From the IMG/VR virus record IMGVR_UViG_3300044213_000107, positions 62,001 to 126,000 of that record: a stretch of 64,000 nucleotides of DNA; one strand, 5' to 3'. Numbering within the stretch: position 1 is the stretch's first letter; every line of letters starts with the position of its first letter. The translations under genes and the position numbers were made by a program. This document shows positions 7,832 through 25,476 of this stretch, in pieces. The notes below the pieces were generated by a model. That model saw only the letters and a program-made list of their open reading frames with translations. It ran no database searches and had not been told where the DNA came from.

Positions 7832-8102
7832 TGCCGGCCTCTTTTAAGATATCAAATACACTACCAATTTCAAACTCAACGGTGTTATCGTCGATTACTT
7901 GAATTTTTTTGTGTGTAAAAAAACTTCTCATATACATTTCTAAAAATTCCGCAACAGTCATTTCTGCAGTTTGAAAAAATTCAGAATTGAGTTTTTTATT
8001 TGTTGCAACCAAATAGTAGTAATTATCTCTGTGGTCCAAAGAAAATTCTATGGCCAAAGGCCGAAACTTTTGGTTTAATTGATCAACAAACTCAAAATCC
8101 AT
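7821..8102 (-). CDS. Hypothetical protein
   Basis: Overlaps both neighbours within the operon. Confidence 0.55.
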   Translation of the reverse strand: MDFEFVDQLNQKFRPLAIEFSLDHRDNYYYLVATNKKLNSEFFQTAEMTVAEFLEMYMRSFFTHKKIQVIDDNTVEFEIGSVFDILKEAGSDE

Positions 8103-9120
8103 TTTTTATTCCGTATTCATATAATTCAAAACTGGCCAGGTTCTTGGCCTTGCTTTCGCACATGATATCAAACTGATCCCAAAAACTCAATGCCCACTGA
8201 TTCACTGGGCGATTCCAATAAAAGTTACTGTGTGCTCGTAGTTTTGCCTTTTTATAGCCTTCTGTGAGCAATTGTGCATGATCGGGCATTGTATCCGCAC
8301 AGTGATCAACTAAGACATCTTCTCGACTAACACTATAATGCATAGTAGGGCGTACGCCACGCCAACTATCAACCACTCGCTTAACGCTATCGCTATTTGG
8401 ATCAATGTAAACCCCTTCACGTATCCAATGATGATGTACATCAAGCACAATAGGAACAATATCGCTAATGGATAAGCAATCGTCGAGTCCATGTGTCATC
8501 TCCTCGTTTTCGATGGTGATTGTATTGCGGGCTTCAGGCGACAGTTTTGGATATGCCAACCTAATGCCGTTGGGGCCTTGACGGCCTGCGATGTGTACAT
8601 TGATTTTGAAGTCTTGGAACCGTTGTCCAAAACCCATCCAACGGGCCATGTCAACATGATATTCAAACTCCTCTATACTTCTGCGGACAATATCTGGGTT
8701 GTCACTAGCCAAGACAGTAAACTGCCCAGGGTGCATACTACAGCGAACACTCCGCAAGCGAGCCAGATCGCCGATGGTCGCAAAGTGTTTTGCACAGTAT
8801 TCACGAACGTCAGGCCGACGCCAAAAATACTGATATTCAGCATGAGTATACATAGGGAGTACGTCACTACTAAGCCGTACCATACGAAGGGATTCATCTA
8901 AGTTACCTACTCTTTCTACAAGTTTACGAACAGATTCGATATTGCCAGTCATCAAGTCCCAGAGTTTTTGCTCAGCGACTTCTCGAGTTTGGCGATTAAG
9001 CCAAGCCACAGTTGTAGTACCAGTGTTAAATTCTTTGGCGGTATCTGTTTGACGAATACCGTTGATTTGACTGGGACCGTCAATCCATTTACAGCAAAAC
9101 CCCATACGTTTAATGGTCAT
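8092..9120 (-). CDS. uvsE: UV damage endonuclease UvsE/UVDE
   Basis: RLSSD, SMHPGQFTVL, TIENEE and VLDVHHHW motifs. Confidence 0.92.
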   Translation of the reverse strand: MTIKRMGFCCKWIDGPSQINGIRQTDTAKEFNTGTTTVAWLNRQTREVAEQKLWDLMTGNIESVRKLVERVGNLDESLRMVRLSSDVLPMYTHAEYQYFWRRPDVREYCAKHFATIGDLARLRSVRCSMHPGQFTVLASDNPDIVRRSIEEFEYHVDMARWMGFGQRFQDFKINVHIAGRQGPNGIRLAYPKLSPEARNTITIENEEMTHGLDDCLSISDIVPIVLDVHHHWIREGVYIDPNSDSVKRVVDSWRGVRPTMHYSVSREDVLVDHCADTMPDHAQLLTEGYKKAKLRAHSNFYWNRPVNQWALSFWDQFDIMCESKAKNLASFELYEYGIKNGF

Positions 9121-9157
9121 AGTGTTATTATACTACAAAAACTTGAATTTTTTACAC

Positions 9158-10330
9158 TTATGTAAAAAGCATCCCACATAAATTTTCCATAATATTACCA
9201 GAATTTTTTTGCTTAGAAACCATTTTTGATAATCCTGGTTTGTTTCTTTCGATCAATTTCATTGAAATACTACTATCAAGAATTTGTTTAATTAAAATAT
9301 CTGGCGGTAATCTCAATAATGTTTTAAAAATTTCGATATCTCTCAACGGAGTCCATGTTAGTGTATTCCCAAGATGCCAATGCTGAAAATCATTTATATT
9401 AATATTACACAATTCCAACATCATTCTTCTATTAGACCAATTTGGATTTATTTTTCGTGTTTCGAATATTTTATAGTTTTCTGGTTTGTTAAAATATGTA
9501 TGTTGCATATAAGATATATTTTTAGGATCATTTAATAAATCAACCATAGAAATTTTATAATGTTTAAGAAACAAATCTACAGTCAAAGGACTACGCATCA
9601 TAAATTCGTCCCCGGGTGTGCCCGAAGTTATAATACATGGAGTAGTCCAATGATGAATTTGTTTATAGCCCCAATTATTTTTTAAAATTTCATATGAGTT
9701 TAACATCCAAAATTTATCATATTCAAAATGGCTATAGTTGCATAATTCATAATTATCTGTAAATCTTTGAAGATAACTATAAACTAACATACTATCAACA
9801 CCGCCACTTAAAAACACTCGAATTGGTAATTTATTATGTTGTATAAAAGAACGTGTTCGATCAATTAAAATTTTTTCTATAATTTTTATAGCATCTTCTT
9901 CGCTTAGACTAGTTTCGTTAAACACTCCGATAATATTAAATGTAGATATGTATGTTTTTATATCAGAATCTATACTTATTAAATTATTGGCCCAGCACAC
10001 TTTATCGTATTTTTGCAAATTAGTAACTTCAACAAATTCATTTACATAAACAGGAAAACTTCTATATCTATCAGTTTTTAAATGTATTAACTTATTATAT
10101 GGATCATATACAATGGCGCAAAAATTACCTGTAAAACTAGGTCGATCTTGATTTATTATCATATCTAATACTTGATCTATATCATAAGAATCAAGATATC
10201 CTTTATAGATAACTATTTTGTTATCAATATTTTTTTTGTTCCATCCAGAGTCGACATTAATATATAAATTGCCAACATTGTATGATTGGATGAAATTATT
10301 TTTTGGGTCGTGTGAAATTGAAAAAAACAT
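9158..10330 (-). CDS. Asparagine synthase-like protein (N-type ATP pyrophosphatase), AT-rich
   Basis: FLSGGVDS PP-loop; N-terminal FTGNFCAIV...DRYRSFPV resembles an Ntn-like domain. Confidence 0.65.
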   Translation of the reverse strand: MFFSISHDPKNNFIQSYNVGNLYINVDSGWNKKNIDNKIVIYKGYLDSYDIDQVLDMIINQDRPSFTGNFCAIVYDPYNKLIHLKTDRYRSFPVYVNEFVEVTNLQKYDKVCWANNLISIDSDIKTYISTFNIIGVFNETSLSEEDAIKIIEKILIDRTRSFIQHNKLPIRVFLSGGVDSMLVYSYLQRFTDNYELCNYSHFEYDKFWMLNSYEILKNNWGYKQIHHWTTPCIITSGTPGDEFMMRSPLTVDLFLKHYKISMVDLLNDPKNISYMQHTYFNKPENYKIFETRKINPNWSNRRMMLELCNININDFQHWHLGNTLTWTPLRDIEIFKTLLRLPPDILIKQILDSSISMKLIERNKPGLSKMVSKQKNSGNIMENLCGMLFT

Positions 10331-11434
10331 TTAGGTAATATTTAAAACTTGTGCCAAATAAGGATCGTAGTCAAGGAGAGATTTTCTAATAGGACTAAAT
10401 TGTACAATGTATTCTCTTAACTTTTCTATAGATGATGGATCTTGATTTTTGCCAATAAGTTGATAATAGTGGTCAAACTTTGAGTTAGAATTTGCTATAT
10501 CAATTAAAGAACTATTTTGAGGCCATTGAATTAAAGACATAAAACTTGGATTATTTAATGTATAAATTTTTAAATTTAAATTTAAAGAATTACAATATGT
10601 ATCAAGTTTGTGCAAATCATTTATATTTAACACACTTAAGGTACAATGTACCTGTAGATAATCTACTGTAGATTTGTAAAATTTTATATTACGATCTATA
10701 TCGTTCCATACACTTCCGTATCGTAACCACTCCGATTTCCGCCCAACTGCATCTAGACTTATAAACACGCAAACATAATTCCATATATTTTTTTCAAATA
10801 ATGTAGAATTAATTTTAGTTCCGTTAGTATGAAATTCAATCCTTGTTCTTTTAGATAAATTTAATTTTACTAACATTGATAAAAAATCTAATACAGATGG
10901 ATTATAAATAGGTTCTCCGCCGATTAGTGTCAGTGTAACAATATCGTGATAATCATAACTTTTAAGTATATTCTTTTTAAGATCAGGCCAATTCTTATTG
11001 AATTCTTTATTCGGATCAGTAAATGACACTGGTAGTATACCGATTAATCGTTTATGTTGAGCAATAACAGAACTCGAAGATTCGCCGCAAGTCCAGCAGG
11101 CTAGATTGCATATATTTCCAAATTTTAAATTCCACCTACTAGGCCATAATCCAAAATTTTTGTTTATAATAACCTGATCGTCAACTGCAGTTCTAAAACT
11201 ACTACCACTAAAAGATTCTTGTATCTTACAGCTGGCACATTCGTTTAACCAAGTCTGATTGTATAAACTATTTTTAAATGCTAATAGTCGATCATCCGCC
11301 CACCATTCTTCAAATGATTGATCTTCTAAACTATTGATTGTTGGAGATGCACTACAACAATTTCTAAATTGTGTATTTAATCCTGAAAATGCTTCAACGA
11401 ATGGAACCACACAAAATGGTTTATTAAAACTCAT
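10331..11434 (-). CDS. Radical SAM protein with N-terminal SPASM/twitch-like Cys cluster
   Basis: CNLACWTC (CxxxCxxC), GGEP and TNGT motifs; N-terminal FCVVPF...NCC...CASC. Confidence 0.9.
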   Translation of the reverse strand: MSFNKPFCVVPFVEAFSGLNTQFRNCCSASPTINSLEDQSFEEWWADDRLLAFKNSLYNQTWLNECASCKIQESFSGSSFRTAVDDQVIINKNFGLWPSRWNLKFGNICNLACWTCGESSSSVIAQHKRLIGILPVSFTDPNKEFNKNWPDLKKNILKSYDYHDIVTLTLIGGEPIYNPSVLDFLSMLVKLNLSKRTRIEFHTNGTKINSTLFEKNIWNYVCVFISLDAVGRKSEWLRYGSVWNDIDRNIKFYKSTVDYLQVHCTLSVLNINDLHKLDTYCNSLNLNLKIYTLNNPSFMSLIQWPQNSSLIDIANSNSKFDHYYQLIGKNQDPSSIEKLREYIVQFSPIRKSLLDYDPYLAQVLNIT

Positions 11435-13777: not shown

Positions 13778-13809
13778 TTTGTGCTCCTTTTTTGCTTTAC
13801 TATGTGTAT

Positions 13810-13838
13810 ATTATAGCATTTTGAACAATTTGGATCAA
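13810..13838 (-). promoter_or_regulatory. sigma70-type promoter TTGATC-17-TATAAT
   Basis: Followed by ATACACATAGTAAAG and an RBS. Confidence 0.8.
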
Positions 13839-13896: not shown

Positions 13897-14193
13897 TTAG
13901 GACCAACGTAGCAAAAATGCCGTAATATCTTCAGGTCTTTTGAACTTCCACATATCAAAACTAACCCTAACCCCACACTCGTTTTTTTCCGACCACTGTT
14001 GTATTTCCACCATATCTTCTTCGCTAATTGCTACTTCAAACCCACGTGGTCCGGGGTTCCATGTTGCTTTAAGTTTAAAGCCTGGAAGTTGGTTCCATAG
14101 TATTTTTGGTTTTCTATTTTTCATACTCTTGATCCATTTTATAAAGTCTTGGTTCCAGTGTCTTATCACAGGATTGTATGTGCCGTGGTTCAT
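13897..14193 (-). CDS. LRWS-family small protein
   Basis: Ends WKFKRPEDITAFLLRWS. Confidence 0.75.
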   Translation of the reverse strand: MNHGTYNPVIRHWNQDFIKWIKSMKNRKPKILWNQLPGFKLKATWNPGPRGFEVAISEEDMVEIQQWSEKNECGVRVSFDMWKFKRPEDITAFLLRWS

Positions 14194-14453
14194 TGTCGTT
14201 GCCAGTGTTGTATAAATTGATCTAATTCCGCTCGAGTCCTAAAATAAAACTCATTATATCGTGTTCTACAATGACGCCGAAACTGGTACTCGCACCATCC
14301 AGCAATATCCTGATACACCTGCGGATCGTAGTTTTGGTGGAACAACTCGTCAGTTGTGGGATGTCTACGCCACAAGCCGGTATCTACCCTACAAAACCAA
14401 TACACTGGGTAAGGTGGGTGATCGATCTTTTCCTGACGAACAGTGAATCTCAT
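14190..14453 (-). CDS. LRWS-family small protein (diverged end)
   Basis: DIAGWCEYQF...FYFRTRAELDQFIQHW; ATG lies inside the previous gene's TCATGA. Confidence 0.65.
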   Translation of the reverse strand: MRFTVRQEKIDHPPYPVYWFCRVDTGLWRRHPTTDELFHQNYDPQVYQDIAGWCEYQFRRHCRTRYNEFYFRTRAELDQFIQHWQRQ

Positions 14454-14689
14454 GACCACTTCAACGATACAAATGCCGCATCTCGTTCATTCTTAAGTTT
14501 TACTCCGACAAAGAAGTGTTGACTGATGCCGTCTTCTGCTATAGGATATGACTTCCAATCTAGATAAGGTTCGCCTATGTTGACCCACAACCAATGAAAG
14601 AATTCTTCCTTCTCGGGACGGTGCCATGCTACACTGGTAGCAACTGCATAAGGCCAATTTATTTTTTCTGGGTCTTTAAGGTATTTCAT
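14450..14689 (-). CDS. LRWS-family small protein
   Basis: Ends VKLKNERDAAFVSLKWS. Confidence 0.7.
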   Translation of the reverse strand: MKYLKDPEKINWPYAVATSVAWHRPEKEEFFHWLWVNIGEPYLDWKSYPIAEDGISQHFFVGVKLKNERDAAFVSLKWS

Positions 14690-14940
14690 TGTGATTTTAA
14701 TGCTAACCAAGTTACAAAGTCATGATCCAAACAATCTCGGCGAATCCAAACACCATCTGCGTCGGTGAACCATTTGCGCAGGTGCAGTAGTTCGTATAAC
14801 CCTGTGCGACCCAACCGCTGTTCGCATAGTTGGCCCAGAGCATTGCCCCACACTCCAGGATTGGTAGGATCGTCGATCTTAACCTTAAAATGTTGGTGGG
14901 TTTGTTTGTATAGTTGCATATAATACTCGGTTAACTCCAC
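14686..14940 (-). CDS. Small protein, weak LRWS-family member
   Basis: Ends DFVTWLALKSQ; start codon uncertain. Confidence 0.55.
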   Translation of the reverse strand: MELTEYYMQLYKQTHQHFKVKIDDPTNPGVWGNALGQLCEQRLGRTGLYELLHLRKWFTDADGVWIRRDCLDHDFVTWLALKSQ

Positions 14941-15176
14941 TTTAATGTAAACAATACAGCATCTTCTTCGTGAGTAAAATGGAATCTGTAATATTTAGTA
15001 CGGTCTCCATCTGCACGAAAACCGTTCCATAAGCATTGCCAGCGGCCTCCACGATGATCAACAATGCTCCACCGCGGGCCAAATGTTGCCCGGCACCATT
15101 GCTCGGCCCGTCTACTCTTTTCTTTTGACACGTAAACAGTATACTCGAATAAAGGTGTACGCTTATAATTGCCCAT
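14931..15176 (-). CDS. LRWS-family small protein
   Basis: RAEQWCRATFG...FHFTHEEDAVLFTLKWS. Confidence 0.75.
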   Translation of the reverse strand: MGNYKRTPLFEYTVYVSKEKSRRAEQWCRATFGPRWSIVDHRGGRWQCLWNGFRADGDRTKYYRFHFTHEEDAVLFTLKWS

Positions 15177-15557
15177 TTAACGGTGTCTTAATAAATTTAA
15201 CAATGTTTGGTAAGCATGATATGCGTCAGCAACGACAGGATTAGCACTCACTATTCGTTCATCTTCTCTGAGTCGTGCTACAATTTCTCTTTCTTGGGCA
15301 TACGTAGTTTCCAGGTTTTCGTAATGCTTATACATACGAATCATATGATTAAATGTATCTACGGGAACGGTAACATTTACACATTCAACTTCTTCGATTT
15401 TAGTTGATTGGTAGAACGCCGCATCCGAAATTTCTCCCTGCCAGGGGTTATAATTTAGTTGGTATGATCGGGGGATTCGCCTATATCGCTGGCTAGTAGG
15501 ACGAACCTGCATTTCAAATTCATTTAAGAATCTTTGATCTTCTATGGGATTATTCAT
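15177..15557 (-). CDS. Hypothetical protein inside the array (not LRWS family)
   Basis: Coupled ORF lacking the C-terminal motif. Confidence 0.65.
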   Translation of the reverse strand: MNNPIEDQRFLNEFEMQVRPTSQRYRRIPRSYQLNYNPWQGEISDAAFYQSTKIEEVECVNVTVPVDTFNHMIRMYKHYENLETTYAQEREIVARLREDERIVSANPVVADAYHAYQTLLNLLRHR

Positions 15558-15566
15558 TGTTTTAAT

Positions 15567-15824
15567 TTAACTCCAACGTAACACAAACCACATAAACTTT
15601 TGTTCATCTGTGATTGTGTACTCTTTGATATTAAGACGGGATGCACCAGGTGCAAATTTTAACTGAACTCCGCAATCAGTGGTCAAATAATACAAGTACG
15701 CATCTTTGTGTTGATCTCCGGTGACAATGGGCGTTCCTGGTGGGCAAACAAACGGTTGCTTTTCCCATTCAGTCTCCCACTGTCGCTGGCACATTTGATA
15801 CATTTCTTTTAGACCAATCGTCAT
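15567..15824 (-). CDS. LRWS-family small protein
   Basis: Ends YTITDEQKFMWFVLRWS. Confidence 0.75.
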   Translation of the reverse strand: MTIGLKEMYQMCQRQWETEWEKQPFVCPPGTPIVTGDQHKDAYLYYLTTDCGVQLKFAPGASRLNIKEYTITDEQKFMWFVLRWS

Positions 15825-16021
15825 GAATACCTCAATACAAATAGTGTGTACAGTTTTTCATCGTGCCACTTGACATTCAACTTATGATTCTTATTCTTGC
15901 TTTTACCGATTGTGGCTTTATAAGGCTCAAGACCTTCTTCAATAATGCCTTCGGGATCATTGCTGTCAATGAAATTCTTAAAATACCCAGGGGTTATTCT
16001 ATAGTATTGTTTCTTTATCAT
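15821..16021 (-). CDS. LRWS-family small protein
   Basis: Ends VKWHDEKLYTLFVLRYS. Confidence 0.7.
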   Translation of the reverse strand: MIKKQYYRITPGYFKNFIDSNDPEGIIEEGLEPYKATIGKSKNKNHKLNVKWHDEKLYTLFVLRYS

Positions 16022-16398
16022 GACCACCTCAACGACATTATTGTAGCATATCTGGCGTATTTTTGTCTAACTCGTATAGTTAAACAATTGTCCGCCGCAT
16101 CGTTGCCGACAAATCCCCAATTCCAATCCCAACCCTGACGACCCACATTTTCTTCAAGCCACGGGCGGTAAAAATCGTTGGGGTCGGCACTTTCTAACTC
16201 TACACATACAGCACCTCCGAGATCGACCCATCTAGGATCCGTATGGTCTACTACTATTTTTCCTTTGGGCCAACGAACCTTGACAACAACTCCGGGCACA
16301 AAACTCCACCAGAGTTTTTCCCAAAACCTAAATCCCGTTGGGTAGTAATGTGTAAACTTACCCTTTATTCTAAATAGTTTTTTAATTTCCCACTTCAT
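16018..16398 (-). CDS. LRWS-family protein
   Basis: YRPWLEENVG...ATIMSLRWS. Confidence 0.75.
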   Translation of the reverse strand: MKWEIKKLFRIKGKFTHYYPTGFRFWEKLWWSFVPGVVVKVRWPKGKIVVDHTDPRWVDLGGAVCVELESADPNDFYRPWLEENVGRQGWDWNWGFVGNDAADNCLTIRVRQKYARYATIMSLRWS

Positions 16399-16646
16399 GA
16401 CCACCTCAACAAAAATAAAGTTTTGTATTTCTCATCCTCAAATACCAGCGACACTGCGGGATCATCCCAGTAAGCACGGTAAGGCTCTAATACTTTATTA
16501 ATGTATTCAATGGTGATATCACCAACCCTATCTCGCGGTATATAATCCTCACTGGCGATTATATCCAATAAAAAATTCTGCCAGGCAATGGGGCATTGAC
16601 TGAGATTGTCACCTAGTTTAAGAGTTACTAACATTTTTATGTCCAT
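16395..16646 (-). CDS. LRWS-family small protein
   Basis: Ends LVFEDEKYKTLFLLRWS. Confidence 0.75.
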   Translation of the reverse strand: MDIKMLVTLKLGDNLSQCPIAWQNFLLDIIASEDYIPRDRVGDITIEYINKVLEPYRAYWDDPAVSLVFEDEKYKTLFLLRWS

Positions 16647-16888
16647 TTTAATACAAACATGGTGTAGTCAGCATCATTATTGAATGTAACTCGGAATTTG
16701 TAACCATTATCTGTGTAAGTGTAAGACGCATTGATCTTAGCAAGTTCTTGCGTCATAAAACGTTCCACTATACCAGGTGGAGCATTTGGGGCATTAATGA
16801 ATTTACGCCACATATCCGCATACCAACGCTCAAAATAATTTCTGGGTTGGTAAGTGTTAATGTTTTGGTAATATTCTCTTACTATCAT
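16637..16888 (-). CDS. LRWS-family small protein
   Basis: Ends VTFNNDADYTMFVLKWT; start MIVREYY overlaps the upstream stop. Confidence 0.75.
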   Translation of the reverse strand: MIVREYYQNINTYQPRNYFERWYADMWRKFINAPNAPPGIVERFMTQELAKINASYTYTDNGYKFRVTFNNDADYTMFVLKWT

Positions 16889-17136
16889 GTCCACCTCAAT
16901 ACAAACATAGTATGATTTGCCTCGCTGTCCCACCGCAAATACCAACCACCAGTTTTAGTCTGGATCAATCGGCCACCCTGCGGTTTTAATTCGTAGTTGG
17001 CCACTGTAACGGGATTCCAGTCATTGGCCTGGGCTTTGTCTCTACAATGAGTCCAGAATCGCTGAAAATATGCAGAGTACCAACCCAGTCCAGGATTTAT
17101 AATTTCTACTCTAAACTTGCCGTCTGTGTTCTTCAT
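16885..17136 (-). CDS. LRWS-family small protein
   Basis: Ends LRWDSEANHTMFVLRWT. Confidence 0.75.
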   Translation of the reverse strand: MKNTDGKFRVEIINPGLGWYSAYFQRFWTHCRDKAQANDWNPVTVANYELKPQGGRLIQTKTGGWYLRWDSEANHTMFVLRWT

Positions 17137-17378
17137 GACCATTTCAACTTACAAAGCATGGCATCTTTTTCATACAAGAACCAAACACTGCGGAGAAATA
17201 CAGCATAAGTGTGAGCGTCATAAGTTTGCTTGCACCATTTGCTGATTTTATCGTGTAGAGAATTATCATGAAGAGGACTACTATAGTCCACGCCCTTGTG
17301 CCAGCCAAACTCTTCGGCCTCGTAAGGCATCATAGGGAAACGATGCCGCTGACCTTCTACAAACATATATGCTTCCAT
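17133..17378 (-). CDS. LRWS-family small protein
   Basis: KISKWCKQTY...VWFLYEKDAMLCKLKWS. Confidence 0.75.
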   Translation of the reverse strand: MEAYMFVEGQRHRFPMMPYEAEEFGWHKGVDYSSPLHDNSLHDKISKWCKQTYDAHTYAVFLRSVWFLYEKDAMLCKLKWS

Positions 17379-17527
17379 TATGCCCACCTCAATAAAAACA
17401 ATGTGTAATCTTGCTCGTCGTCGAAAATGATTGTTTCATACGTCCATCTCCAAGGGCCCTTGAGATTATCACAGCACCATAAGTAAATATCTTCGGTAGG
17501 AGCAAAACCATTGTATTGCCAACTCAT
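17378..17527 (-). CDS. LRWS-family minimal member (49 aa, not in the ORF track)
   Basis: Translated by hand: MSWQYNGFAPTEDIYLWCCDNLKGPWRWTYETIIFDDEQDYTLFLLRWA; GAGGT RBS. Confidence 0.75.
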   Translation of the reverse strand: MSWQYNGFAPTEDIYLWCCDNLKGPWRWTYETIIFDDEQDYTLFLLRWA

Positions 17528-17534
17528 GACAACC

Positions 17535-17783
17535 TCAAAAATCACCGCTCAAAAGATACATTGTCAAATCGGGACCCTCTACTCGAACACATTGGCTACT
17601 ATGCCGAATAGTGTCCCGACTATGAACTTGTCCCTTCCATTTGTAAGTCCATTCCACGCGGATTTGTTGCGGAGTAAATTTAACAACCTTGCCAAGTTTC
17701 ATGCCGCTGGCATAAGGTCCCGGAAAAACAACATAGTCCCCGACTGCTAACTCGCGATTTAGAAAATCTCTGAAAACTGTCAT
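17535..17783 (-). CDS. Hypothetical KOW/SH3-like protein
   Basis: DFLNRELAVGDYVVF...GKVVKFT. Confidence 0.6.
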   Translation of the reverse strand: MTVFRDFLNRELAVGDYVVFPGPYASGMKLGKVVKFTPQQIRVEWTYKWKGQVHSRDTIRHSSQCVRVEGPDLTMYLLSGDF

Positions 17784-17794
17784 TATAACACCTT

Positions 17795-18085
17795 TTATTT
17801 TGCGTTTTTAAACATGCTGAGCAAATAGCCTGCACGATTTAAGTCAAAATTCTCTTGACGATAATGCCAATTCTTTTTACGCTCTGCAATTTCAAGTGCG
17901 GCTACTAATTTATACTTTTCGTTAGATGTAGCGGTGCGAAGCATATTTGTCATTGTAATTATGTCTGCGGCATACTCTACCCATTTTAACGTGCTGTTTA
18001 TTTTGTCTCGTTTTATTATTGCACGTTCTGAGTTGGGGCTAAAATTTGAACTAGAATACTTGCGTGTAATTTGTGCAAAATTCAT
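17795..18085 (-). CDS. Hypothetical early protein
   Basis: Own promoter (18111-18139) and AAGGAG RBS. Confidence 0.65.
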   Translation of the reverse strand: MNFAQITRKYSSSNFSPNSERAIIKRDKINSTLKWVEYAADIITMTNMLRTATSNEKYKLVAALEIAERKKNWHYRQENFDLNRAGYLLSMFKNAK

Positions 18086-18110
18086 GCTTTTACTCCTTTT
18101 CTATATGTAT

Positions 18111-18139
18111 ATTATAACAGAAAAGTCGTTATTCAGCAA
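18111..18139 (-). promoter_or_regulatory. sigma70-type promoter TTGCTG-17-TATAAT
   Basis: Followed by ATACATATAG and an RBS. Confidence 0.7.
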
Positions 18140-18169
18140 GTCAAAAAAGTAGTACTAAAGTATTACTTT

Positions 18170-18397
18170 TTAACTCCAACGCAAAGCAAATAATGTCAGG
18201 GTAGCATCATTGGGAATTTCTACGGTCATACCCTTGACCGTACACAAATGATCACTACACCATTGGTCTAATTCTTCAAGATGTTCGGCCCAAAATGATA
18301 TATCAGTCAGTAGAATCAAGATGCAGTCGGCGTGATCAACAAACTCCGATCCAATGACAAACCTGTTGCGTTTCCAATGCGCAAATATATCAGTCAT
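18170..18397 (-). CDS. LRWS-family small protein
   Basis: ELDQWCSDH...PNDATLTLFALRWS. Confidence 0.75.
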   Translation of the reverse strand: MTDIFAHWKRNRFVIGSEFVDHADCILILLTDISFWAEHLEELDQWCSDHLCTVKGMTVEIPNDATLTLFALRWS

Positions 18398-18621
18398 AGA
18401 TATTTTAGCACAAAAAACGATTCTGCTTCGGCATTGTAAAAATCAAGATGCACTGTTTCGGTGGTTCCGGATTCTTCGGTATATGTTGTGTGTAATCTAG
18501 GAGTAAATCCCAACTCACGACGCATGACTTCGCGGATCAAGAACACACTAGGTTTCCACTGATATTCTTCTTGTAATTGGTTACGAATACGAGTCCAATC
18601 TTTAACGCTTAAAACTAACAT
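18394..18621 (-). CDS. LRWS-family small protein
   Basis: Ends LDFYNAEAESFFVLKYL. Confidence 0.7.
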   Translation of the reverse strand: MLVLSVKDWTRIRNQLQEEYQWKPSVFLIREVMRRELGFTPRLHTTYTEESGTTETVHLDFYNAEAESFFVLKYL

Positions 18622-18865
18622 GACCTTGCCACTTTAGTTGATGAAATGTATAATCTTGTTCTTCTAAGTCGCCATAAACTGTACACCGATAACCATATGT
18701 TGTCATGTCTGGAGATATTTGATAACTAGGCTGTCCAGTAGTATGAGCCATACACCACTTACCGTAGTCAGTCTGTTGCCAATCCCAAATCGGTGAGGCG
18801 CAGTAAATTTCCGGGTCTTCAACATCACCCATGTTGAACTGATAGAAAATAGTTCTTATCGCCAT
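18602..18865 (-). CDS. LRWS-family small protein (extended end)
   Basis: YGKWCMAH...LEEQDYTFHQLKWQ. Confidence 0.7.
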   Translation of the reverse strand: MAIRTIFYQFNMGDVEDPEIYCASPIWDWQQTDYGKWCMAHTTGQPSYQISPDMTTYGYRCTVYGDLEEQDYTFHQLKWQGHVSFKR

Positions 18866-19026
18866 TTTAATGCAAAGTAAGTGGCCTGCAGTGGATCTTG
18901 AAACTCAAAAGTCCAGTACCAGCTAGGGAATTGATTTTTCACTGAAAAAGCATTGTGTCCAAACTCAGATTGGCACCATAATATGGCATCGTGTACATTA
19001 TTATTAGCAAAAGTCACAGAGTTCAT
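18856..19026 (-). CDS. LRWS-family small protein, first gene of the operon
   Basis: DAILWCQSEFG...FEFQDPLQATYFALKWR; ATG 6 nt after TATAAT. Confidence 0.75.
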   Translation of the reverse strand: MNSVTFANNNVHDAILWCQSEFGHNAFSVKNQFPSWYWTFEFQDPLQATYFALKWR

Positions 19027-19032
19027 ATCTAT

Positions 19033-19061
19033 ATTATAACACAAAAGTGTTTAGTTGTCAA
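19033..19061 (-). promoter_or_regulatory. Consensus sigma70 promoter TTGACA-17-TATAAT driving the array
   Basis: Exact consensus. Confidence 0.88.
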
Positions 19062-19470
19062 AATCTTTAGCCAGTGTGTCCCAGACCTGTTGTTTTTCTT
19101 TGTATTCTTTAAGCAACATTTCATAGTGTTTTCTTGCGGCCTGTAACTCCTCCCAATCATGTTCAAGTTCTGGATTGCTGGCCAGTTTACTTGGTATGCG
19201 TAGTAATTCTTTGATTTCTTTTAAAGTTTCCGTTAAGCTTTCGCCGTTTATAACAATATCTGCATCTTTGCCAGTTAAGTCAAGTTTTCCGCTTTGACTG
19301 ATTAGTGCCGGTGTAGCAGAACCCCAGTTGGTGGAAGTAGAGTAATAAGGTGAATTAGGTGTAATGGCTAACCCTGCACCACCGCCAGTACCACTGCCAG
19401 TAATAACATAAGGAATGTTTGACAATGATATATTGCCCGATGTGCCAAATGTTACATTTGCGTAAGTCAT
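19051..19470 (-). CDS. Phage hypothetical protein with coiled-coil C-terminus
   Basis: G/T-rich N-terminus, then DADIVINGESL...NPELE..W..L. Confidence 0.65.
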   Translation of the reverse strand: MTYANVTFGTSGNISLSNIPYVITGSGTGGGAGLAITPNSPYYSTSTNWGSATPALISQSGKLDLTGKDADIVINGESLTETLKEIKELLRIPSKLASNPELEHDWEELQAARKHYEMLLKEYKEKQQVWDTLAKDFDN

Positions 19471-20306
19471 AGAACTATTTCGTATAATTTGGAGTCAAAC
19501 TCCTCAGCACGTTTTTCATAGCCTTTGTATCCACGTGGGTTACAGACAACGCGAGTTTGGCCAATCATATAATCAAAGGTGTCATGAGTGTGCCCGTGAG
19601 TCCACACTTGGATTTCTGGGTGATCCAAAATAAACTCGCTCAAATCACTACTGTATGCTCCGTTCATGAGAGTATCACTGGCATAACGTGGATGTGTGCT
19701 TAGTTTGCTGGGACTATGGTGTGTGACAACCACAACTGGCCGTGCACCGGCGTTGTTTGCTAATGCTTGACTAAAATACGCTAGGGTCTTTTCATGCTGA
19801 GCCACGGTATATTCCGGAGTCATTCGGTGATACATGTTTGTACTTTCGTTGAACATGGTAATCTGACGATAGTCATTCATAGCACTGGCCACGTGATACA
19901 TAGTCAACGCATCACGCCGATTCATGTCTGTCCACAATGTTGCCCCAAGGAATAACACACCATCAATTTCTAGACTTTCGTTTTCCAACAGGTGTACATT
20001 TTCGGGCAGTTGTTCCCGAATGTGATCGTAGGTTTTTTGAACTTGGAAACGATAGTGTTCGTGATTTCCCATAACTAAAATAGTTTTACGATATTTTTGA
20101 CTGCATTCTTCGAGTAAAAATCTGTAAAACCGATCGGGTCTTTGGTCAGCACGCTCGTGCTCCAACAATACCATGTCGGGGTTATACCAGTTTTTCTTGA
20201 TGCTTTTGGCTTCGCATAAATCGCCGGAGATGATCAAAACGTCACCACCTGGTAACGTTAGGTCAGCAAAGTCGATGTGTAGGTCTGAGATTACATTTAT
20301 ACGCAT
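19467..20306 (-). CDS. Calcineurin-like metallophosphoesterase
   Basis: SDLH, GDL, GNHEHY, THH and HGHTH motifs. Confidence 0.92.
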   Translation of the reverse strand: MRINVISDLHIDFADLTLPGGDVLIISGDLCEAKSIKKNWYNPDMVLLEHERADQRPDRFYRFLLEECSQKYRKTILVMGNHEHYRFQVQKTYDHIREQLPENVHLLENESLEIDGVLFLGATLWTDMNRRDALTMYHVASAMNDYRQITMFNESTNMYHRMTPEYTVAQHEKTLAYFSQALANNAGARPVVVVTHHSPSKLSTHPRYASDTLMNGAYSSDLSEFILDHPEIQVWTHGHTHDTFDYMIGQTRVVCNPRGYKGYEKRAEEFDSKLYEIVL

Positions 20307-21988: not shown

Positions 21989-23308
21989 TTAGAGTTTTTC
22001 TCCAGGAACGAAGCCACGGAAATGTAAGAACCTCGGAAAGCGAAGACTATAAGTGCCATCTTGATTTTGTGTAACGGCATCGGCACGGACTTCAACAACA
22101 TTACCCACCATTGCCGCACGACTGGCCCAGTAATTGTCGCGGTCGGCATCACTAAACCCACTGCCGACATTAACCCGAATAGTTCTACCATCGTCTTCTC
22201 CTTCGCAGATTATAGCACCTAGTCGTCCCGCATTGCGACCTGTCCCTTCTTCTACTGCCACCACACTTAAACTAACTTCAATAAATGGTTTGAGTTTAAG
22301 CCATGCTACACTACGCTTGCATTCATAAACTGCCTCGGGATCCTTGATCATAATGCCTTCGTAGCCGCCAGCAACTGCCTGCGTATTAATCATTTTAAAT
22401 CTTTCTTGACCTTTGGCAGTATCAAGATCGACTAGTTCTTGGCCCACAACCGCAACATTTGGCATGTGTTCACGCAATGGGTTATACCATGCTATTAATC
22501 CACGACTGCGTTCTAATTGTGTTCGTGTGCTGCGACCTTGTTGAAATTCCTTGAGTGTCAGTGCATCAAATACATGTAACACCGCATCATTGGCCGCAAC
22601 ATCTGTTTTACGATGCACCTGTTTCATTAGGTCTTGGAAACTTGAACTCATAACTTCGCCATCAAGCACCACAGGTTCTGCAGCAAATAATACCGCATGT
22701 TTGGCTATTTGTTTTTTGATATGCTCAAAGTTTACCAACTCTTTACCATTGCGACTATACTGATCAACTTGTCCATTGGGATATACAACGGTGATAACAC
22801 GCACACCATCAAGTTTAACTTCAATTAATTTTTCGCCTGTGATCTTACTTTCGTGATTTGCACTATCGTACGCAAGTTGGCAAGCAAAAACCGGAATCAC
22901 ATATTCGGTGTTAATTTTTTCTACAGCTTTGTTAATTGTTTTTTCGCTTACACCGCATCGTAGATCTTTAATTAAAATACGACGATACCAACCATTCCAT
23001 TGTAGTTGGGTGGCTCGAGACATCATCATGTTAACTGCGGTAATAGCCGCATTGCCAGTCAATTTTCGTTCTGCTAGTTGTTGAGCAGTTTTCCAAAATG
23101 ATTCTGCAGGTAATCCTGCAGTTTTGGTTTCTTTTGTTTTTTCTGGTACTTGTTTAATGCCGTAGGTGATCAAAGAATCTAATGCGGCACGGGCACCACG
23201 GAAAAATTCTGCGTTACCTGCGGCTGCTTCACGAGCAACTACAGATTCTTTAAATAAACGACTATTGTCAGACTCTAATTCTGAAACAACTTCCCAAGGG
23301 TTAAGCAT
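21989..23308 (-). CDS. lig: ATP-dependent DNA ligase
   Basis: Motif I KLDGVR; LDGE, EGIMIKD and WLKLKP motifs; C-terminal OB fold with SLRFPRF. Confidence 0.95.
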   Translation of the reverse strand: MLNPWEVVSELESDNSRLFKESVVAREAAAGNAEFFRGARAALDSLITYGIKQVPEKTKETKTAGLPAESFWKTAQQLAERKLTGNAAITAVNMMMSRATQLQWNGWYRRILIKDLRCGVSEKTINKAVEKINTEYVIPVFACQLAYDSANHESKITGEKLIEVKLDGVRVITVVYPNGQVDQYSRNGKELVNFEHIKKQIAKHAVLFAAEPVVLDGEVMSSSFQDLMKQVHRKTDVAANDAVLHVFDALTLKEFQQGRSTRTQLERSRGLIAWYNPLREHMPNVAVVGQELVDLDTAKGQERFKMINTQAVAGGYEGIMIKDPEAVYECKRSVAWLKLKPFIEVSLSVVAVEEGTGRNAGRLGAIICEGEDDGRTIRVNVGSGFSDADRDNYWASRAAMVGNVVEVRADAVTQNQDGTYSLRFPRFLHFRGFVPGEKL

Positions 23309-23335
23309 ATTGGCGCTCCTTAATATATTATACTA

Positions 23336-23524
23336 TTAATCAATTTGTATGTCAACTAAACGACCTTTATCAAAAATCCAATAGGTTTCAAGTTGGTTAT
23401 AACTAACCCAAACACAACGGTTTCCGGGACGTATAGTGGCAAATTTTACATTCAGTTTTCTTAGTTCATCTAAGACAACAAGTGCTTCAAACTCATTTAC
23501 CGCAGGATCGATTACTATACTCAT
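23336..23524 (-). CDS. Hypothetical protein
   Basis: Short ORF in the operon. Confidence 0.5.
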   Translation of the reverse strand: MSIVIDPAVNEFEALVVLDELRKLNVKFATIRPGNRCVWVSYNQLETYWIFDKGRLVDIQID

Positions 23525-23526
23525 GT

Positions 23527-23883
23527 TTATCCTTGAGATTTTTTAACTGCATGCTTACATGCGCCACGAAAACGAAATCCTGCACAACTGCAGGTCAATT
23601 GACCATCTTCTTCGGTTACTGTATAAGTGTCACCTTTGGAACCGGTGACGGTCCATGATTGACTGACCATTTTTAGCTCTTCTCGGGGAAAAAATCCCCA
23701 GGTGTTTGTAACCTCTTTAAATTTTCGTCCACGCACATCTAATTTCAACGGTGCTTTAAATTCAAATATATTTTTTTTACCTACTGGTAGATAAGCATAG
23801 GCCTTGCTCTTGCCGTCGTCCATGAAGTAGATGTGATTGGGAGTGGTGTCTTCCCATGCAGTGATTTCTTGAAACACTTTCAT
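23527..23883 (-). CDS. SWIM zinc-finger protein
   Basis: CSCAGFRFRGACKH. Confidence 0.8.
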   Translation of the reverse strand: MKVFQEITAWEDTTPNHIYFMDDGKSKAYAYLPVGKKNIFEFKAPLKLDVRGRKFKEVTNTWGFFPREELKMVSQSWTVTGSKGDTYTVTEEDGQLTCSCAGFRFRGACKHAVKKSQG

Positions 23884-24092
23884 TTAACAAAGATTCCTAC
23901 AATGTAGATGGCCAACAAAATACCGTTTACAATTATCAAGTTGGTTTCACGAATTCTAACAGCCCAGATTAAGTATAACACAGCACCAAGGTTAAGTAAA
24001 TAGATGTTTACAGGATCTATACGAAAACTGGTGCAGACTGCACCAAAAACAACACAGGCACAGCCCAACCATTTTAACGCAAAATTCAACAT
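23880..24092 (-). CDS. Small membrane protein
   Basis: Three hydrophobic segments; promoter TTGCCC-18-TATAAT at 24122-24151. Confidence 0.6.
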   Translation of the reverse strand: MLNFALKWLGCACVVFGAVCTSFRIDPVNIYLLNLGAVLYLIWAVRIRETNLIIVNGILLAIYIVGIFVK

Positions 24093-24167
24093 TTCTAACC
24101 TTTTTTCCTTACTATGTGTATATTATAACACATTTTGGGTATTTTGGGCAAAGTTTGGGTGTTGCGT

Positions 24168-24749
24168 TTATGCAACAAACTTTTTTGAAAATTTTTGTTT
24201 TGATAACCAATCACTATATATTTTTACGCCATCATCTGACAAATTATAGTTTAAATTTATTAAATCTGTCAATATATCACCGTTGAGTATATTTTCTAAT
24301 TTAATTATGTGTTGAGTATGAGTTTCAATCATACTAGAATACTCAATTAGTTTTTGTGTGTACTCTTTAATATTGTTTGCTCCGCATTGTTTTTGCATTT
24401 CTTCCCAAACATGAGCACGATGGCATTTTTTAAAGCGTTCAGCTGCCCAGATTGCATAGTCAAAATCTTTAACTATTATTGATAAAAAGTCATGCTTTTG
24501 TGCTATATGATAGGTCGCGTCATGACTTGATATACTTTTATATTTTCCAGTAACTGAGTCAATATATAGTTGTTTTTTGCTGTCCGAATCAAATAAATGT
24601 GGTTTTTTCAATCTCGTACGTTCAGGGTTATGTATTATTGTACCAAAATTTGCAGATATTGCACAGTCCGTTGGGTCTATGATTGCAGATATTAAATCCC
24701 CACAAGTTCCGCCGGTATAACAAACAATAGTTAAATTATCAATGTCCAA
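24168..24749 (-). CDS. AT-rich hypothetical protein (sulfotransferase/P-loop-like N-terminus)
   Basis: IVCYTGGTCGDLI motif; low GC. Confidence 0.55.
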   Translation of the reverse strand: MDIDNLTIVCYTGGTCGDLISAIIDPTDCAISANFGTIIHNPERTRLKKPHLFDSDSKKQLYIDSVTGKYKSISSHDATYHIAQKHDFLSIIVKDFDYAIWAAERFKKCHRAHVWEEMQKQCGANNIKEYTQKLIEYSSMIETHTQHIIKLENILNGDILTDLINLNYNLSDDGVKIYSDWLSKQKFSKKFVA

Positions 24750-24777
24750 GGATCTCCTTTATATACAAACCAAAATT

Positions 24778-24912
24778 TTAAATTACTACATAATCTTCTT
24801 TACCGCAACCGCACTCTGGACAAGTAAAATCTTCGGACAATTCATCCCATGCTCCTTCAGCAGCTTCATCGTGTTCGTGTCCGCAGACTACGCATACATG
24901 TGTTTCACTCAT
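24778..24912 (-). CDS. Rubredoxin (44 aa, not in the ORF track)
   Basis: MSETHVCVVCGHEHDEAAEGAWDELSEDFTCPECGCGKEDYVVI; two CxxCG knuckles; ATGA overlap with rubrerythrin. Confidence 0.9.
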   Translation of the reverse strand: MSETHVCVVCGHEHDEAAEGAWDELSEDFTCPECGCGKEDYVVI

Positions 24913-25361
24913 TTCAATTCTCCTAGTTTAGTTTGATATGCTGCCGCATGACGCTTCTCTACTTTTGCTAGAGCCGCAAAACGCTTTTCTGCTTTGGCCA
25001 AAACTTCGGCAAACTGTTCGGCGTGTTCTTTAGATTCGTCAATTTGTTCCTGTGCTACTTGTGCCGCTTCTAAAGCACCTTCTGCAACTGCTTTTGCATG
25101 AAACTCTGGGTACATAGTAGTAAACTCGTATGTTTCACCTTCGATTGCTTTTTCAAGACATTCTTTGGTTGTTGGTTTGCCAATCAGCAATTCCAAATGA
25201 CCCCAAGCATGTAGCAGTTCTTGGTCTGCTGTATGCCAAAAGTGTTTAGCAATATCTTCATATCCTTCTTCACGAGCAATCTTAGCAAAGTAACGATACT
25301 TTATATGTGCTTGTGATTCTCCGGCCAATGCGGCTTCTAAATTTTTAATAGTAATTGACAT
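24909..25361 (-). CDS. rbr: Rubrerythrin family ferritin-like protein
   Basis: NLEAALAGESQAHIKYRYFAKIAREEG...ELLHA...GETYEFTTMYPEF...EHA; promoter TTGACA-18-TATAAT at 25393-25422. Confidence 0.92.
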   Translation of the reverse strand: MSITIKNLEAALAGESQAHIKYRYFAKIAREEGYEDIAKHFWHTADQELLHAWGHLELLIGKPTTKECLEKAIEGETYEFTTMYPEFHAKAVAEGALEAAQVAQEQIDESKEHAEQFAEVLAKAEKRFAALAKVEKRHAAAYQTKLGELK

Positions 25362-25476
25362 AAGTCCTCCTTTGATTAGTATTAATACTAATATTATATA
25401 TGACAAAAATACCTATTGTCAACTTGGTTTCAATAGTTTTTTACTGAATATTTTTTTATGGGCCTAATAGAAGAAA

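What the first reader, a model, noticed from the sequence alone, without database searches (positions are those of the whole stretch)
14446..17545. Dual-coded junction TTGAGGTGGTCATGA: the LRWS codons are also the next gene's Shine-Dalgarno, start and stop
Seen: at several junctions (about 16018, 16395, 16885 and 17378; variants at 14450, 15821 and 17133) L-R-W-(S/T/A)-stop is written TTG AGG TGG NCA TGA/TAA. This supplies GAGGTG plus an ATGA or TAATG overlap for the next gene. The non-member gene ending at 17535 also ends TGAGGTTGTCATG, so the DNA motif persists without the peptide. Inference: each gene behaves as a self-contained cassette carrying the initiation signal for whatever follows. 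The shared 12-15 nt junction could act as microhomology for insertion, deletion or shuffling, like an integron without an integrase.
Basis: partly seen in the sequence, partly recalled or inferred. Interest (0 to 1): 0.7.

Follow-up and report, generated by a model that had tools for sequence, protein, structure and literature searches.

The report
Protein tail doubling as ribosome-binding site
In a freshwater jumbo phage, the last four codons of a large unnamed family of small proteins are spelled so that they also form the ribosome-binding site, start and stop for the next gene; this is a clear case of a known principle (translational coupling), and the phage's genes are swapped in and out at these junctions.

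Summary
TTGAGGTGGTCATGA with up to 2 mismatches occurs 8 times, all on the minus strand between 14450 and 17538 (0.16 expected). It closes genes of a 14-member paralogous family found only at window 13897-19044.

The dual coding is supported. Arg in the tail is AGG at 5 of 5 overlapped junctions in the window and CGT at 3 of 3 non-overlapped ones. AGG is 4.9% of Arg codons genome-wide. In about 200 relatives' tails, Arg is AGR in 76/78 ATGA-overlap junctions against 12/26 non-overlapped ones. The same orthologue switches spelling with context. YTG-AGG-TGG-TC gives the strongest predicted anti-SD pairing of 48 alternative spellings.

The peptide L-[R/K]-W is a protein feature: it ends the last helix of a confidently modelled beta-alpha-beta-beta-alpha domain. 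About 7,900 50%-identity clusters match the profile, and no Pfam, PHROG or NCBIfam model does.

Metagenome contigs at least 95% alike show gene gain, loss and replacement with breakpoints at or beside the motif. However, motif-less gene boundaries in related phages attract breakpoints equally. The motif is therefore not shown to drive recombination. No integrase gene or attC-like inverted-repeat structure was found.

Verdict: a new variant of known kinds (translational coupling, phage mosaicism).

The parts
13897..19044 (-). Array of small early genes. It holds 14 members of the L-[R/K]-W-tail family plus interleaved non-members and degenerate members.
   Evidence: The family is absent from the rest of the 260.7 kb record.
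16018..16032 (-). Exact junction TTG AGG TGG TCA TGA. It is the tail of gene 16018-16398 (SLRWS) and the SD, ATG and stop overlap for gene 15821-16021.
16395..16409 (-). Exact junction. It is the tail of gene 16395-16646 (LLRWS) and the start of gene 16018-16398.
   Evidence: Many contig alignments break at 16392-16415.
16885..16899 (-). Junction TTG AGG TGG ACA TGA (VLRWT), with the start of gene 16637-16888.
17133..17147 (-). Junction TTG AAA TGG TCA TGA (KLKWS). The Lys variant gives a weak SD. AAATGG also makes an in-frame ATG 6 nt upstream.
17378..17392 (-). Junction TTG AGG TGG GCA TAA TG (LLRWA), with a TAATG one-base overlap onto gene 17133-17378.
17524..17538 (-). Motif TTGAGGTTGTCATGA after the non-member gene 17535-17783. 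That gene's TGA stop lies inside TTGAGG in another frame. The ATG at 17527 starts family gene 17378-17527.
   Evidence: In runs X3 and X4 the same motif plus the downstream gene follow a different upstream sequence, with the break at 17538.
15821..15835 (-). Junction TTG AGG TAT TCA TGA (VLRYS), with the start of gene 15567-15824. It is one end of the joints 15820->16018 and 15820->17524 seen in other samples.
14450..14464 (-). Junction TTG AAG TGG TCA TGA (SLKWS), with the start of gene 14190-14453.
15567..15581 (-). Non-overlap tail TTA CGT TGG AGT TAA of gene 15567-15824 (VLRWS). The next gene starts 9 nt further on. Strains at least 95% alike carry TTG AGG TGG TCA TGA here, followed by a different downstream gene.
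   Evidence: loose ends at 15583 and 15594; L102.
18170..18184 (-). Non-overlap tail TTG CGT TGG AGT TAA (ALRWS), followed by an 84-nt gap.
   Evidence: orthologue cluster c37 switches to AGG/TCA/TGA where the next gene overlaps.
13897..13911 (-). Non-overlap tail CTA CGT TGG TCC TAA (LLRWS), followed by a 119-nt gap.
   Evidence: cluster c35.
18856..18870 (-). Tail TTA AAA TGG CGA TAA (ALKWR). The next ORF's ATG (18865) is formed by the Lys and Trp codons, giving an 11-nt overlap.
   Evidence: the same arrangement is kept in many relatives.
17782..17811 (-). Sigma-70-like promoter match (10/12, with TG) just upstream of gene 17535-17783, which heads the gap-free run of genes down to 15567.
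   Evidence: This is a consensus match only.
19033..19061 (-). Perfect TTGACA-17-TATAAT promoter match in front of the first family gene. Its -10 region belongs to a short repeat also found at 18101-18131 and 13800-13818.
   Evidence: D10, D11.

Best explanation
The 15-nt motif is the translation-initiation region of each downstream gene, written inside the last four codons of the upstream gene. Read as DNA, G-AGG-TGG is a Shine-Dalgarno sequence that starts 9 nt before the ATG. The last sense codon ends in A, so NNA TGA contains ATG, and the stop and start overlap by 4 nt. A ribosome that finishes one small protein is therefore already positioned on the next start (translational coupling). 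This lets a run of genes with no intergenic space (17783 down to 15567, and largely on to 13897) be expressed from one early transcript.

The peptide L-[R/K]-W is conserved for protein reasons. It ends the C-terminal helix of a small beta-alpha-beta-beta-alpha domain. It is kept where no gene follows, and also where the domain is followed by extra residues. Selection then chooses the spelling. Where a gene overlaps, the tail reads YTG AGG TGG NNA TGA, using a rare Arg codon and giving the strongest anti-SD pairing. Where none does, it reads TTA/CTA CGT TGG AGT/TCC TAA, giving near-minimal pairing. The same pressure also tilts the amino-acid choice towards Arg over Lys and fixes the third base of the last codon.

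Because all members share this tail, its last 4-7 codons are interchangeable. A neighbouring gene can be replaced together with its own initiation region without changing the upstream protein. Shown: the motif, the codon dependence and the cassette-level differences between strains. Inferred: the coupling itself and the single long transcript.
For: Motif count: 8 found against 0.16 expected.

Window codons: Arg is AGG at 5/5 overlapped tails and CGT at 3/3 non-overlapped tails. Leu is TTG at 7/8 against 1/6.

Genome background: AGG 4.9% of Arg, TTG 19% of Leu, TCA 18% of Ser.

Relatives, 196 non-redundant tails: AGR 76/78 in ATGA-overlap junctions against 12/26 non-overlapped (p about 1e-8). 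YTG Leu is 78/96 against 25/55. Arg:Lys is 78:21 against 26:30. The last codon is always NNA but encodes S, A, L, T, G or V.

Within orthologue clusters the spelling follows the junction type. The AGG fraction is higher in overlapped members in 9 clusters, lower in 0 and tied in 14 (sign test p = 0.004).

Predicted duplex with the canonical 16S tail: YTG-AGG is best of 48 spellings at -14.1 kcal/mol with 9 pairs. TTA/CTA-CGT gives -3.5.

The phage uses SDs generally: 39% of long ORFs have one against 11% of random sites, peaking 9-12 nt upstream. Non-family ATGA junctions also carry purine-rich SDs.

Structure model: pLDDT 86.6, with the tail closing helix 70-80. In the top 150 of about 7,900 clusters, the domain sits at the C-terminus in nearly all.

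The general phenomenon is published: C-terminal SD-like hexamers serve overlapping downstream genes (PMC4943179).
Against: There is no expression or ribosome data, so coupling is inferred from sequence. The host and its 16S tail are unknown. AGG is still fairly common in tails scored as non-overlapped in relatives (majority codon in 13 of 47 cluster-level non-overlapped tails). This may reflect short gaps where the SD still works, gene-call errors, recent context switches, or another use of AGG. Lys variants (AAA/AAG) at overlapped junctions have weak SDs, so an SD is not obligatory. The SD sits about 2 nt closer to the ATG than at non-family junctions.
Confidence: 0.8

Rival explanations
1. 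Recombination linker. The shared 12-16 nt junction is itself the substrate for homology-assisted insertion, deletion and reshuffling of genes, acting as a translational counterpart of the PeSL cassettes of T4-type phages.
For: Contigs at least 95% alike from other freshwater samples differ from the window by whole genes, and the breaks lie at the motif. The joint 15820->17524 has 6 shared bases and removes seven genes. The g16 tail and its downstream gene are replaced from 15583/15594. The upstream partner of the 17524 junction is replaced from 17538. Of 24 listed loose ends, 22 lie within 25 nt of a junction (which lists 15820->16018, the exact loss of gene 15821-16021, at 85% or more likeness). 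One joint uses the motif copy that follows a non-member gene in another reading frame. In related loci, 13/27 array breakpoints lie within 15 nt of a family tail, against 7% at random.
Against: Outside the arrays, breakpoints hug ordinary motif-less gene boundaries equally: 40/79 within 15 nt, against 10% at random. Selection for intact genes explains the pattern without targeting; this standard alternative is summarised in PMC3233612. Every position of the 15-mer is already accounted for by the peptide, the SD and the start/stop overlap, so no residual conservation needs a recombination role. Exact identity between copies is only about 16 nt. Logan contigs are short, and many joints have sides of only 21-23 nt; these may be cross-matches of the motif.
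Confidence: 0.3
2. The peptide is a by-product of the DNA signal. The need for an SD plus an ATGA overlap created the L-R-W-x ending, and the protein tail has no function of its own.
For: Arg is favoured over Lys where a gene overlaps, and the last residue is whatever NNA encodes. Among the top 150 family representatives the last residue is S, A, L, V or T, all of which have NNA codons.
Against: L and W are more than 90% conserved together with two upstream Phe positions. They are also kept in members with CGT/AAA spellings and no following gene, and in members where the domain is followed by extra residues or a second domain. The model places them in the packed C-terminal helix.
Confidence: 0.08
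3. Plain shared ancestry. The junctions look alike only because the genes are recent tandem duplicates.
For: The genes are paralogues in one array.
Against: The paralogues share only 13-32% identity, and DNA similarity ends about 20-45 nt from the stop. Orthologues change spelling with context. The motif also follows a non-member gene in another frame.
Confidence: 0.03

Closest known systems
Translational coupling through ATGA/TAATG stop-start overlaps, with the Shine-Dalgarno sequence inside the upstream ORF. Textbook examples are the E. coli trp operon junctions (from general knowledge); the genome-wide pattern is in Diwan and Agashe 2016 (PMC4943179).
   Same: There is a 4-nt or 1-nt overlap and an SD-like hexamer in the upstream gene's C-terminal codons at the usual distance. 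The SD is associated with overlapping downstream genes.
   Different: Here the SD, start and stop are written into a conserved peptide motif shared by a very large protein family. The same 15-mer therefore recurs at many junctions. Its spelling toggles between a strong-SD and a weak-SD form within orthologues and between near-identical strains.
PeSL mobile regulatory cassettes of T4-type phages (Arbiol et al. 2010, PMC2839356; Comeau et al. 2014, PMC4122927).
   Same: Short conserved expression signals are repeated between small ORFan genes in a hyperplastic early region. Insertions, deletions and replacements between close relatives abut them. The exchanged gene arrives with its own expression signal.
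   Different: PeSLs are intergenic elements of about 100 bp made of a promoter and a terminator stem-loop. Here the repeat is 15 nt, lies inside coding sequence and acts at the level of translation. A causal role in recombination is not shown, and mini-circles were not looked for.
The conserved-boundary-sequence model against the illegitimate-recombination-plus-selection model of phage mosaicism (summarised in Cresawn et al. 2011, PMC3233612).
   Same: Module boundaries coincide with gene boundaries.
   Different: This locus offers a boundary sequence that is identifiable and repeated. However, motif-less boundaries in the same phage group behave alike, which fits the selection model at least as well.
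Integron gene-cassette arrays.
   Same: Many small, mostly promoterless genes lie in one orientation downstream of a promoter, and gene content varies between relatives.
   Different: No integrase was found, there are no attC hairpin sites, and there is no evidence of site-specific excision. Cassettes here overlap translationally.

Membership tests
Translationally coupled overlapping genes | The stop of the upstream gene overlaps the start of the downstream gene (ATGA or TAATG) on the same strand. | tested here: met
   seven family junctions (six ATGA, one TAATG) between 14450 and 17392, and further ATGA overlaps at 18394, 14686 and 14190.
Translationally coupled overlapping genes | An SD-like sequence lies within the upstream ORF at a functional distance from the start. 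| tested here: met
   GAGG starts 9 nt before the ATG, and the genome-wide SD peak is 9-12 nt. The predicted duplex is -14.1 kcal/mol.
Translationally coupled overlapping genes | Sequence-level selection for the signal (codon choice depends on the presence of the downstream gene). | tested here: met
Translationally coupled overlapping genes | Downstream translation depends on upstream translation. | not testable with these tools
   This needs reporters or ribosome profiling. No RNA run was examined.
Integron | A tyrosine-recombinase integrase (IntI) next to the array. | tested here: not met
   PF00589 and PF00239 have no match in the 260.7 kb record. The record is estimated to be 74% complete.
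Integron | attC sites: imperfect inverted repeats of 60-140 nt at each cassette end. | tested here: not met
   No local inverted repeats flank the genes, and the repeat is a 15-18 nt direct repeat. There are no Rfam hits.
PeSL-type mobile regulatory cassette | An intergenic sigma-70 promoter plus a terminator stem-loop of about 100 bp. | tested here: not met
   The junction lies inside coding sequence and has no promoter or hairpin. Separate promoter-like repeats do exist at 13800-13838, 18101-18131 and 19025-19061.
PeSL-type mobile regulatory cassette | Indels and replacements between close relatives abut the repeated element. | tested here: met
PeSL-type mobile regulatory cassette | Excised mini-circles carrying one gene and one chimeric element. 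| not tested
   This would need raw reads or PCR on an isolate.
Any named protein family for the L-[R/K]-W-tail domain | A significant match to a curated profile or a solved fold. | tested here: not met
   Pfam, PHROGs and NCBIfam give none. The PDB sequence profile gives E > 0.2. Foldseek against PDB gives E > 0.3. Only uncharacterised viral proteins appear in BFVD and the ESM Atlas.

The most novel reading that the evidence does not exclude
The conserved C-terminal tail of this very large family of small phage proteins has co-evolved with its DNA spelling into a portable translational linker. The last 4-7 codons are interchangeable among members. A gene can therefore be inserted, deleted or swapped by short-homology recombination within the tail, bringing its own ribosome-binding site and leaving the upstream protein intact. 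On this reading it is a coding-sequence, translation-level analogue of PeSL cassettes, and it would help explain why the family has expanded into long arrays in freshwater jumbo phages.
Probability: 0.3. Interest if true: 0.7.

Novelty: new variant of a known kind. Interest (0 to 1): 0.45.

Why it matters
This is an unusually clean natural example of two layers of information in the same codons. A conserved peptide and a complete translation-initiation region share 15 nt. Selection on the second layer is visible as context-dependent synonymous switching, even between strains that are at least 95% alike. The locus also gives a concrete, repeated boundary sequence on which to test a long-standing question: do phage mosaic boundaries arise from targeted recombination at short conserved sequences, or from random recombination followed by selection? 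Finally, it flags a very large protein family (about 7,900 clusters at 50% identity) of small phage proteins that no curated library names.

Tried and rejected
- Megablast of the region against GenBank phages found no match.
- The nearest cultured phages share only 35-40% identity in the neighbouring phosphoesterase. They include freshwater Synechococcus phages S-CREM2 and S-CRM01, and jumbo phages of Brevundimonas, Vibrio, Cronobacter and E. coli.
- Exact-protein look-up of gene 15567-15824 returned only the source record and one identical Logan contig.
- The word-indexed homologue search found a single 79% relative.
- The one metagenome scan, using gene 17535-17783, gave only relatives 65-72% identical. 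Nucleotide-level breakpoint mapping therefore had to rely on Logan contigs and on pairs of related IMG/VR loci.
- HMM iteration on the tail drifted towards relatives and dropped some window members, so the union of seed and iterated hits was used.
- Joints with sides of only 21-23 nt (16415->16885, 16415->17369, 16978->17376) were discounted as probable cross-matches of the repeated tail.
- Fold searches gave only weak PII-like or ferredoxin-like resemblances (TM about 0.45), which were rejected as non-significant.
- One 1,176-aa helicase hit in the profile search matches only the WCxxNFG helix and was set aside.
- Integrase, resolvase and Rfam searches were all negative.


Full report
CONTEXT. 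The window is bases 62001-126000 of a 260.7 kb IMG/VR virus record with 38% G+C, estimated to be 74% complete. This makes it a jumbo phage. DNA near-identical to it occurs in several freshwater metagenome runs. Almost all genes run on the minus strand. The finding lies in a block of small genes downstream of a metallophosphoesterase gene (19467-20306).

TTGAGGTGGTCATGA with up to 2 mismatches occurs 8 times. All copies are on the minus strand, at 14450, 15821, 16018, 16395, 16885, 17133, 17378 and 17524. Dinucleotide-preserving shuffles give 0.16 on average, and an independent repeat search returns the same eight copies (D1). Seven copies are the last four sense codons plus the stop of ORFs ending L-[R/K]-[W/Y]-[S/T/A]. 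The next ORF's ATG overlaps the stop as ATGA at six of them and as TAATG at 17378. The eighth copy (17524-17538) follows the unrelated gene 17535-17783, whose TGA stop is the TGA inside TTGAGG, read in a different frame.

THE GENES. Fourteen ORFs between 13897 and 19044 share a C-terminal signature of the form F-x-F-(D/E-rich)-D-A-x-x-F-x-L-[R/K]-W-x. They often also carry an upstream W-C-x-x-x-F-G helix. Overall identity among them is only 13-32%. No further member exists elsewhere in the record. Pfam, PHROGs and NCBIfam have no model for the family.

An AlphaFold2 model of the 81-aa member 14931-15176, built with a 71-sequence alignment, is confident (mean pLDDT 86.6, pTM 0.74). It shows a beta-alpha-beta-beta-alpha domain whose last helix (residues 70-80) ends in the L-K-W-S tail. 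Fold and feature searches find only uncharacterised proteins of uncultured tailed phages, and nothing significant in the PDB.

A profile search of 1.84 billion representatives finds 7,927 clusters at E <= 1e-3. Nearly all hits are 56-160 aa with the domain at the very C-terminus. Of the best 150, 140 end [LIMVF]-[KR]-[WYF] plus 0-3 residues, with R:K = 107:33 and the last residue being S, A, L, V or T. Some relatives carry extra residues or a second copy of the domain after the L-[K/R]-W helix. The peptide is therefore a structural feature of a protein domain, not merely a shadow of the DNA signal.

DUAL CODING IS SUPPORTED BY CODON STATISTICS. In the window, all five Arg-containing tails that overlap a downstream start use AGG. 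All three that do not overlap use CGT. Leu is TTG in 7 of 8 overlapped tails and in 1 of 6 others. Ser is TCA where ATGA is needed and AGT or TCC otherwise. Genome-wide, AGG is only 4.9% of Arg codons, TTG 19% of Leu and TCA 18% of Ser.

I fetched 94 related loci from IMG/VR and scanned them with tail HMMs. This gave about 280 non-redundant members, of which 196 have a scorable L-[KRQ]-[WYF]-x tail:
- In the 99 ATGA-overlap junctions, Arg is AGG or AGA in 76 of 78, against 12 of 26 where the next start is separate (Fisher p about 1e-8).
- Leu is YTG in 78 of 96, against 25 of 55.
- Arg outnumbers Lys 78:21, against 26:30.
- The last codon is always NNA while encoding S, A, L, T, G or V.

The effect survives phylogenetic control. 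Within orthologue clusters, the AGG fraction is higher in overlapped members in 9 clusters, lower in none and tied in 14 (p = 0.004). Individual orthologues show the switch directly. The relatives of gene 18170-18397 read CTA CGC TGG TCG TAA, TTA CGT TGG AGT TGA and so on when the next gene is apart, and TTG AGG TGG TCA TGA in the one locus where it overlaps.

Among 48 alternative spellings of Leu-(Arg/Lys) followed by TGG TC, YTG AGG gives the strongest predicted duplex with the canonical 16S 3' tail (-14.1 kcal/mol, nine consecutive pairs). The TTA/CTA CGT spelling used at non-overlapped tails is among the weakest (-3.5). The 16S tail sequence comes from general knowledge, and the host is unknown.

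The phage uses SD sequences in general: 39% of long ORFs have one, against 11% of random sites, with a peak 9-12 nt from the ATG. Non-family ATGA junctions in the relatives carry purine-rich SDs as well. [quoted passage not shown] The principle is therefore known. What is particular here is that it is superimposed on a conserved peptide of a huge family, so one 15-mer recurs.

TRANSCRIPTION CONTEXT. Consensus scans place a perfect TTGACA-17-TATAAT match at 19061-19033, a 10/12 match at 17811-17782, and further matches in the few intergenic gaps. A short repeat containing the -10 region occurs in three gaps: 13800-13818, 18101-18131 and 19025-19053 (D10 and D11). From 18085 down to 13897 no gap exceeds 11 nt, and from 17783 to 15567 nine genes follow one another with no real spacer. 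In such a run, initiation has to occur at sites inside the preceding gene. This fits coupling but remains an inference.

GENE TURNOVER AND THE SHUFFLING IDEA. At 45-76% protein identity, only the first few genes after the phosphoesterase keep their order. The rest of the array differs from phage to phage, and even non-family genes have many different neighbours.

For fine mapping I laid Logan contigs from four other freshwater runs on the window. At 95% or more likeness:
- One contig joins 15820 directly to 17524 with 6 shared bases and 47 nt on the shorter side. It places gene 15567-15824 directly after the non-member gene and removes seven genes.
- In three runs, gene 15567-15824 keeps its body but has the tail TTG AGG TGG TCA TGA followed by a different gene. 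The window reads TTA CGT TGG AGT TAA there. The homology ends at 15583 or 15594, just upstream of the LRWS codons.
- In two runs, the 17524 junction and the gene after it are preceded by a different sequence, with the break at 17538, the motif's upstream edge.
- Of the 24 listed loose ends, 22 lie within 25 nt of a junction.

At 85% or more likeness there is also a joint 15820->16018, which is the exact absence of gene 15821-16021. In several cases the motif therefore travels with the downstream gene it serves. The shared protein tail makes that exchange silent for the upstream protein.

This does not show that the motif causes the recombination. I compared 12 pairs of related loci that are 86-97% identical in shared blocks. 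Thirteen of 27 block ends inside arrays lie within 15 nt of a family tail (7% expected). But 40 of 79 block ends outside arrays lie within 15 nt of an ordinary gene boundary (10% expected). Breakpoints at gene boundaries are thus general in these phages. This is the pattern for which the literature offers two models: targeted recombination at conserved boundary sequences, or random recombination filtered by selection (PMC3233612). Every position of the 15-mer is already explained by the peptide, the SD and the overlap. The present repeat is much shorter, lies in coding sequence and acts on translation.

The integron comparison fails on its defining parts. The record has no tyrosine or serine recombinase gene, no attC-like inverted repeats and no Rfam match.

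VERDICT. The dual-coding reading is well supported at the sequence level (confidence about 0.8) and is a striking instance of a known mechanism. Cassette-level turnover at the junctions is real. A causal role of the motif as microhomology is possible (about 0.3) but not distinguished from selection. The function of the protein family is unknown. From its position behind strong early-type promoters, its small size and its rapid turnover, I infer accessory early proteins (host takeover or counter-defence), without direct evidence.

Noticed in passing
window 13897-19044; loci L006-L114: The L-[R/K]-W-tail proteins belong to a very large unnamed family. About 7,900 clusters at 50% identity match the profile. 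The model is a confident beta-alpha-beta-beta-alpha domain. There is no Pfam, PHROG, NCBIfam or PDB counterpart. Related jumbo phages carry up to about 30 copies in 20 kb (L010-L012).
   Followed up: partly
window 18856-18870 and 16637-16651; many loci: There is a second dual-coded overlap. Lys/Arg codon AAA or AGA followed by TGG creates an ATG 10 nt before the end of the stop, and the next ORF starts there. No obvious SD lies upstream of it. This occurs at 18% of family junctions and 1% of other junctions, and is conserved across relatives for the pair 18856-19026 / 18602-18865.
   Followed up: partly
window 13800-13838, 18101-18131, 19025-19061 (minus strand): A promoter-like element containing TGTTATAAT recurs in the three largest intergenic gaps of the array. 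One copy has a perfect TTGACA-17-TATAAT. These are closer in kind to PeSL promoter cassettes than the coding junction is.
   Followed up: no
window 14931-14945, 15567-15581, 18170-18184: Three non-overlapped tails share the ending TGG AGT TAA, which contains GGAG. The next start follows 9, 11 or 84 nt later. This could be a second, weaker junction type.
   Followed up: no
protein P0004: A 141-aa metagenomic protein carries two complete copies of the domain in tandem. The first ILKWL tail is read through into the second copy, as if two neighbouring genes had fused at a junction.
   Followed up: no
window 17535-17783: The non-member gene inside the array carries a precomputed DUF7205 hit. In six other loci its orthologues end SG[D/E]Y with a one-base TGATG or TAATG overlap onto a different downstream gene. 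Its junction with the motif in the window is therefore derived.
   Followed up: partly
window 8092-11434, 21989-26595, 33233-35449: The flanking genes include a UvdE-type UV endonuclease, two radical-SAM proteins, an ATP-dependent DNA ligase and a 738-aa protein with an amidoligase domain. These were not examined further.
   Followed up: no
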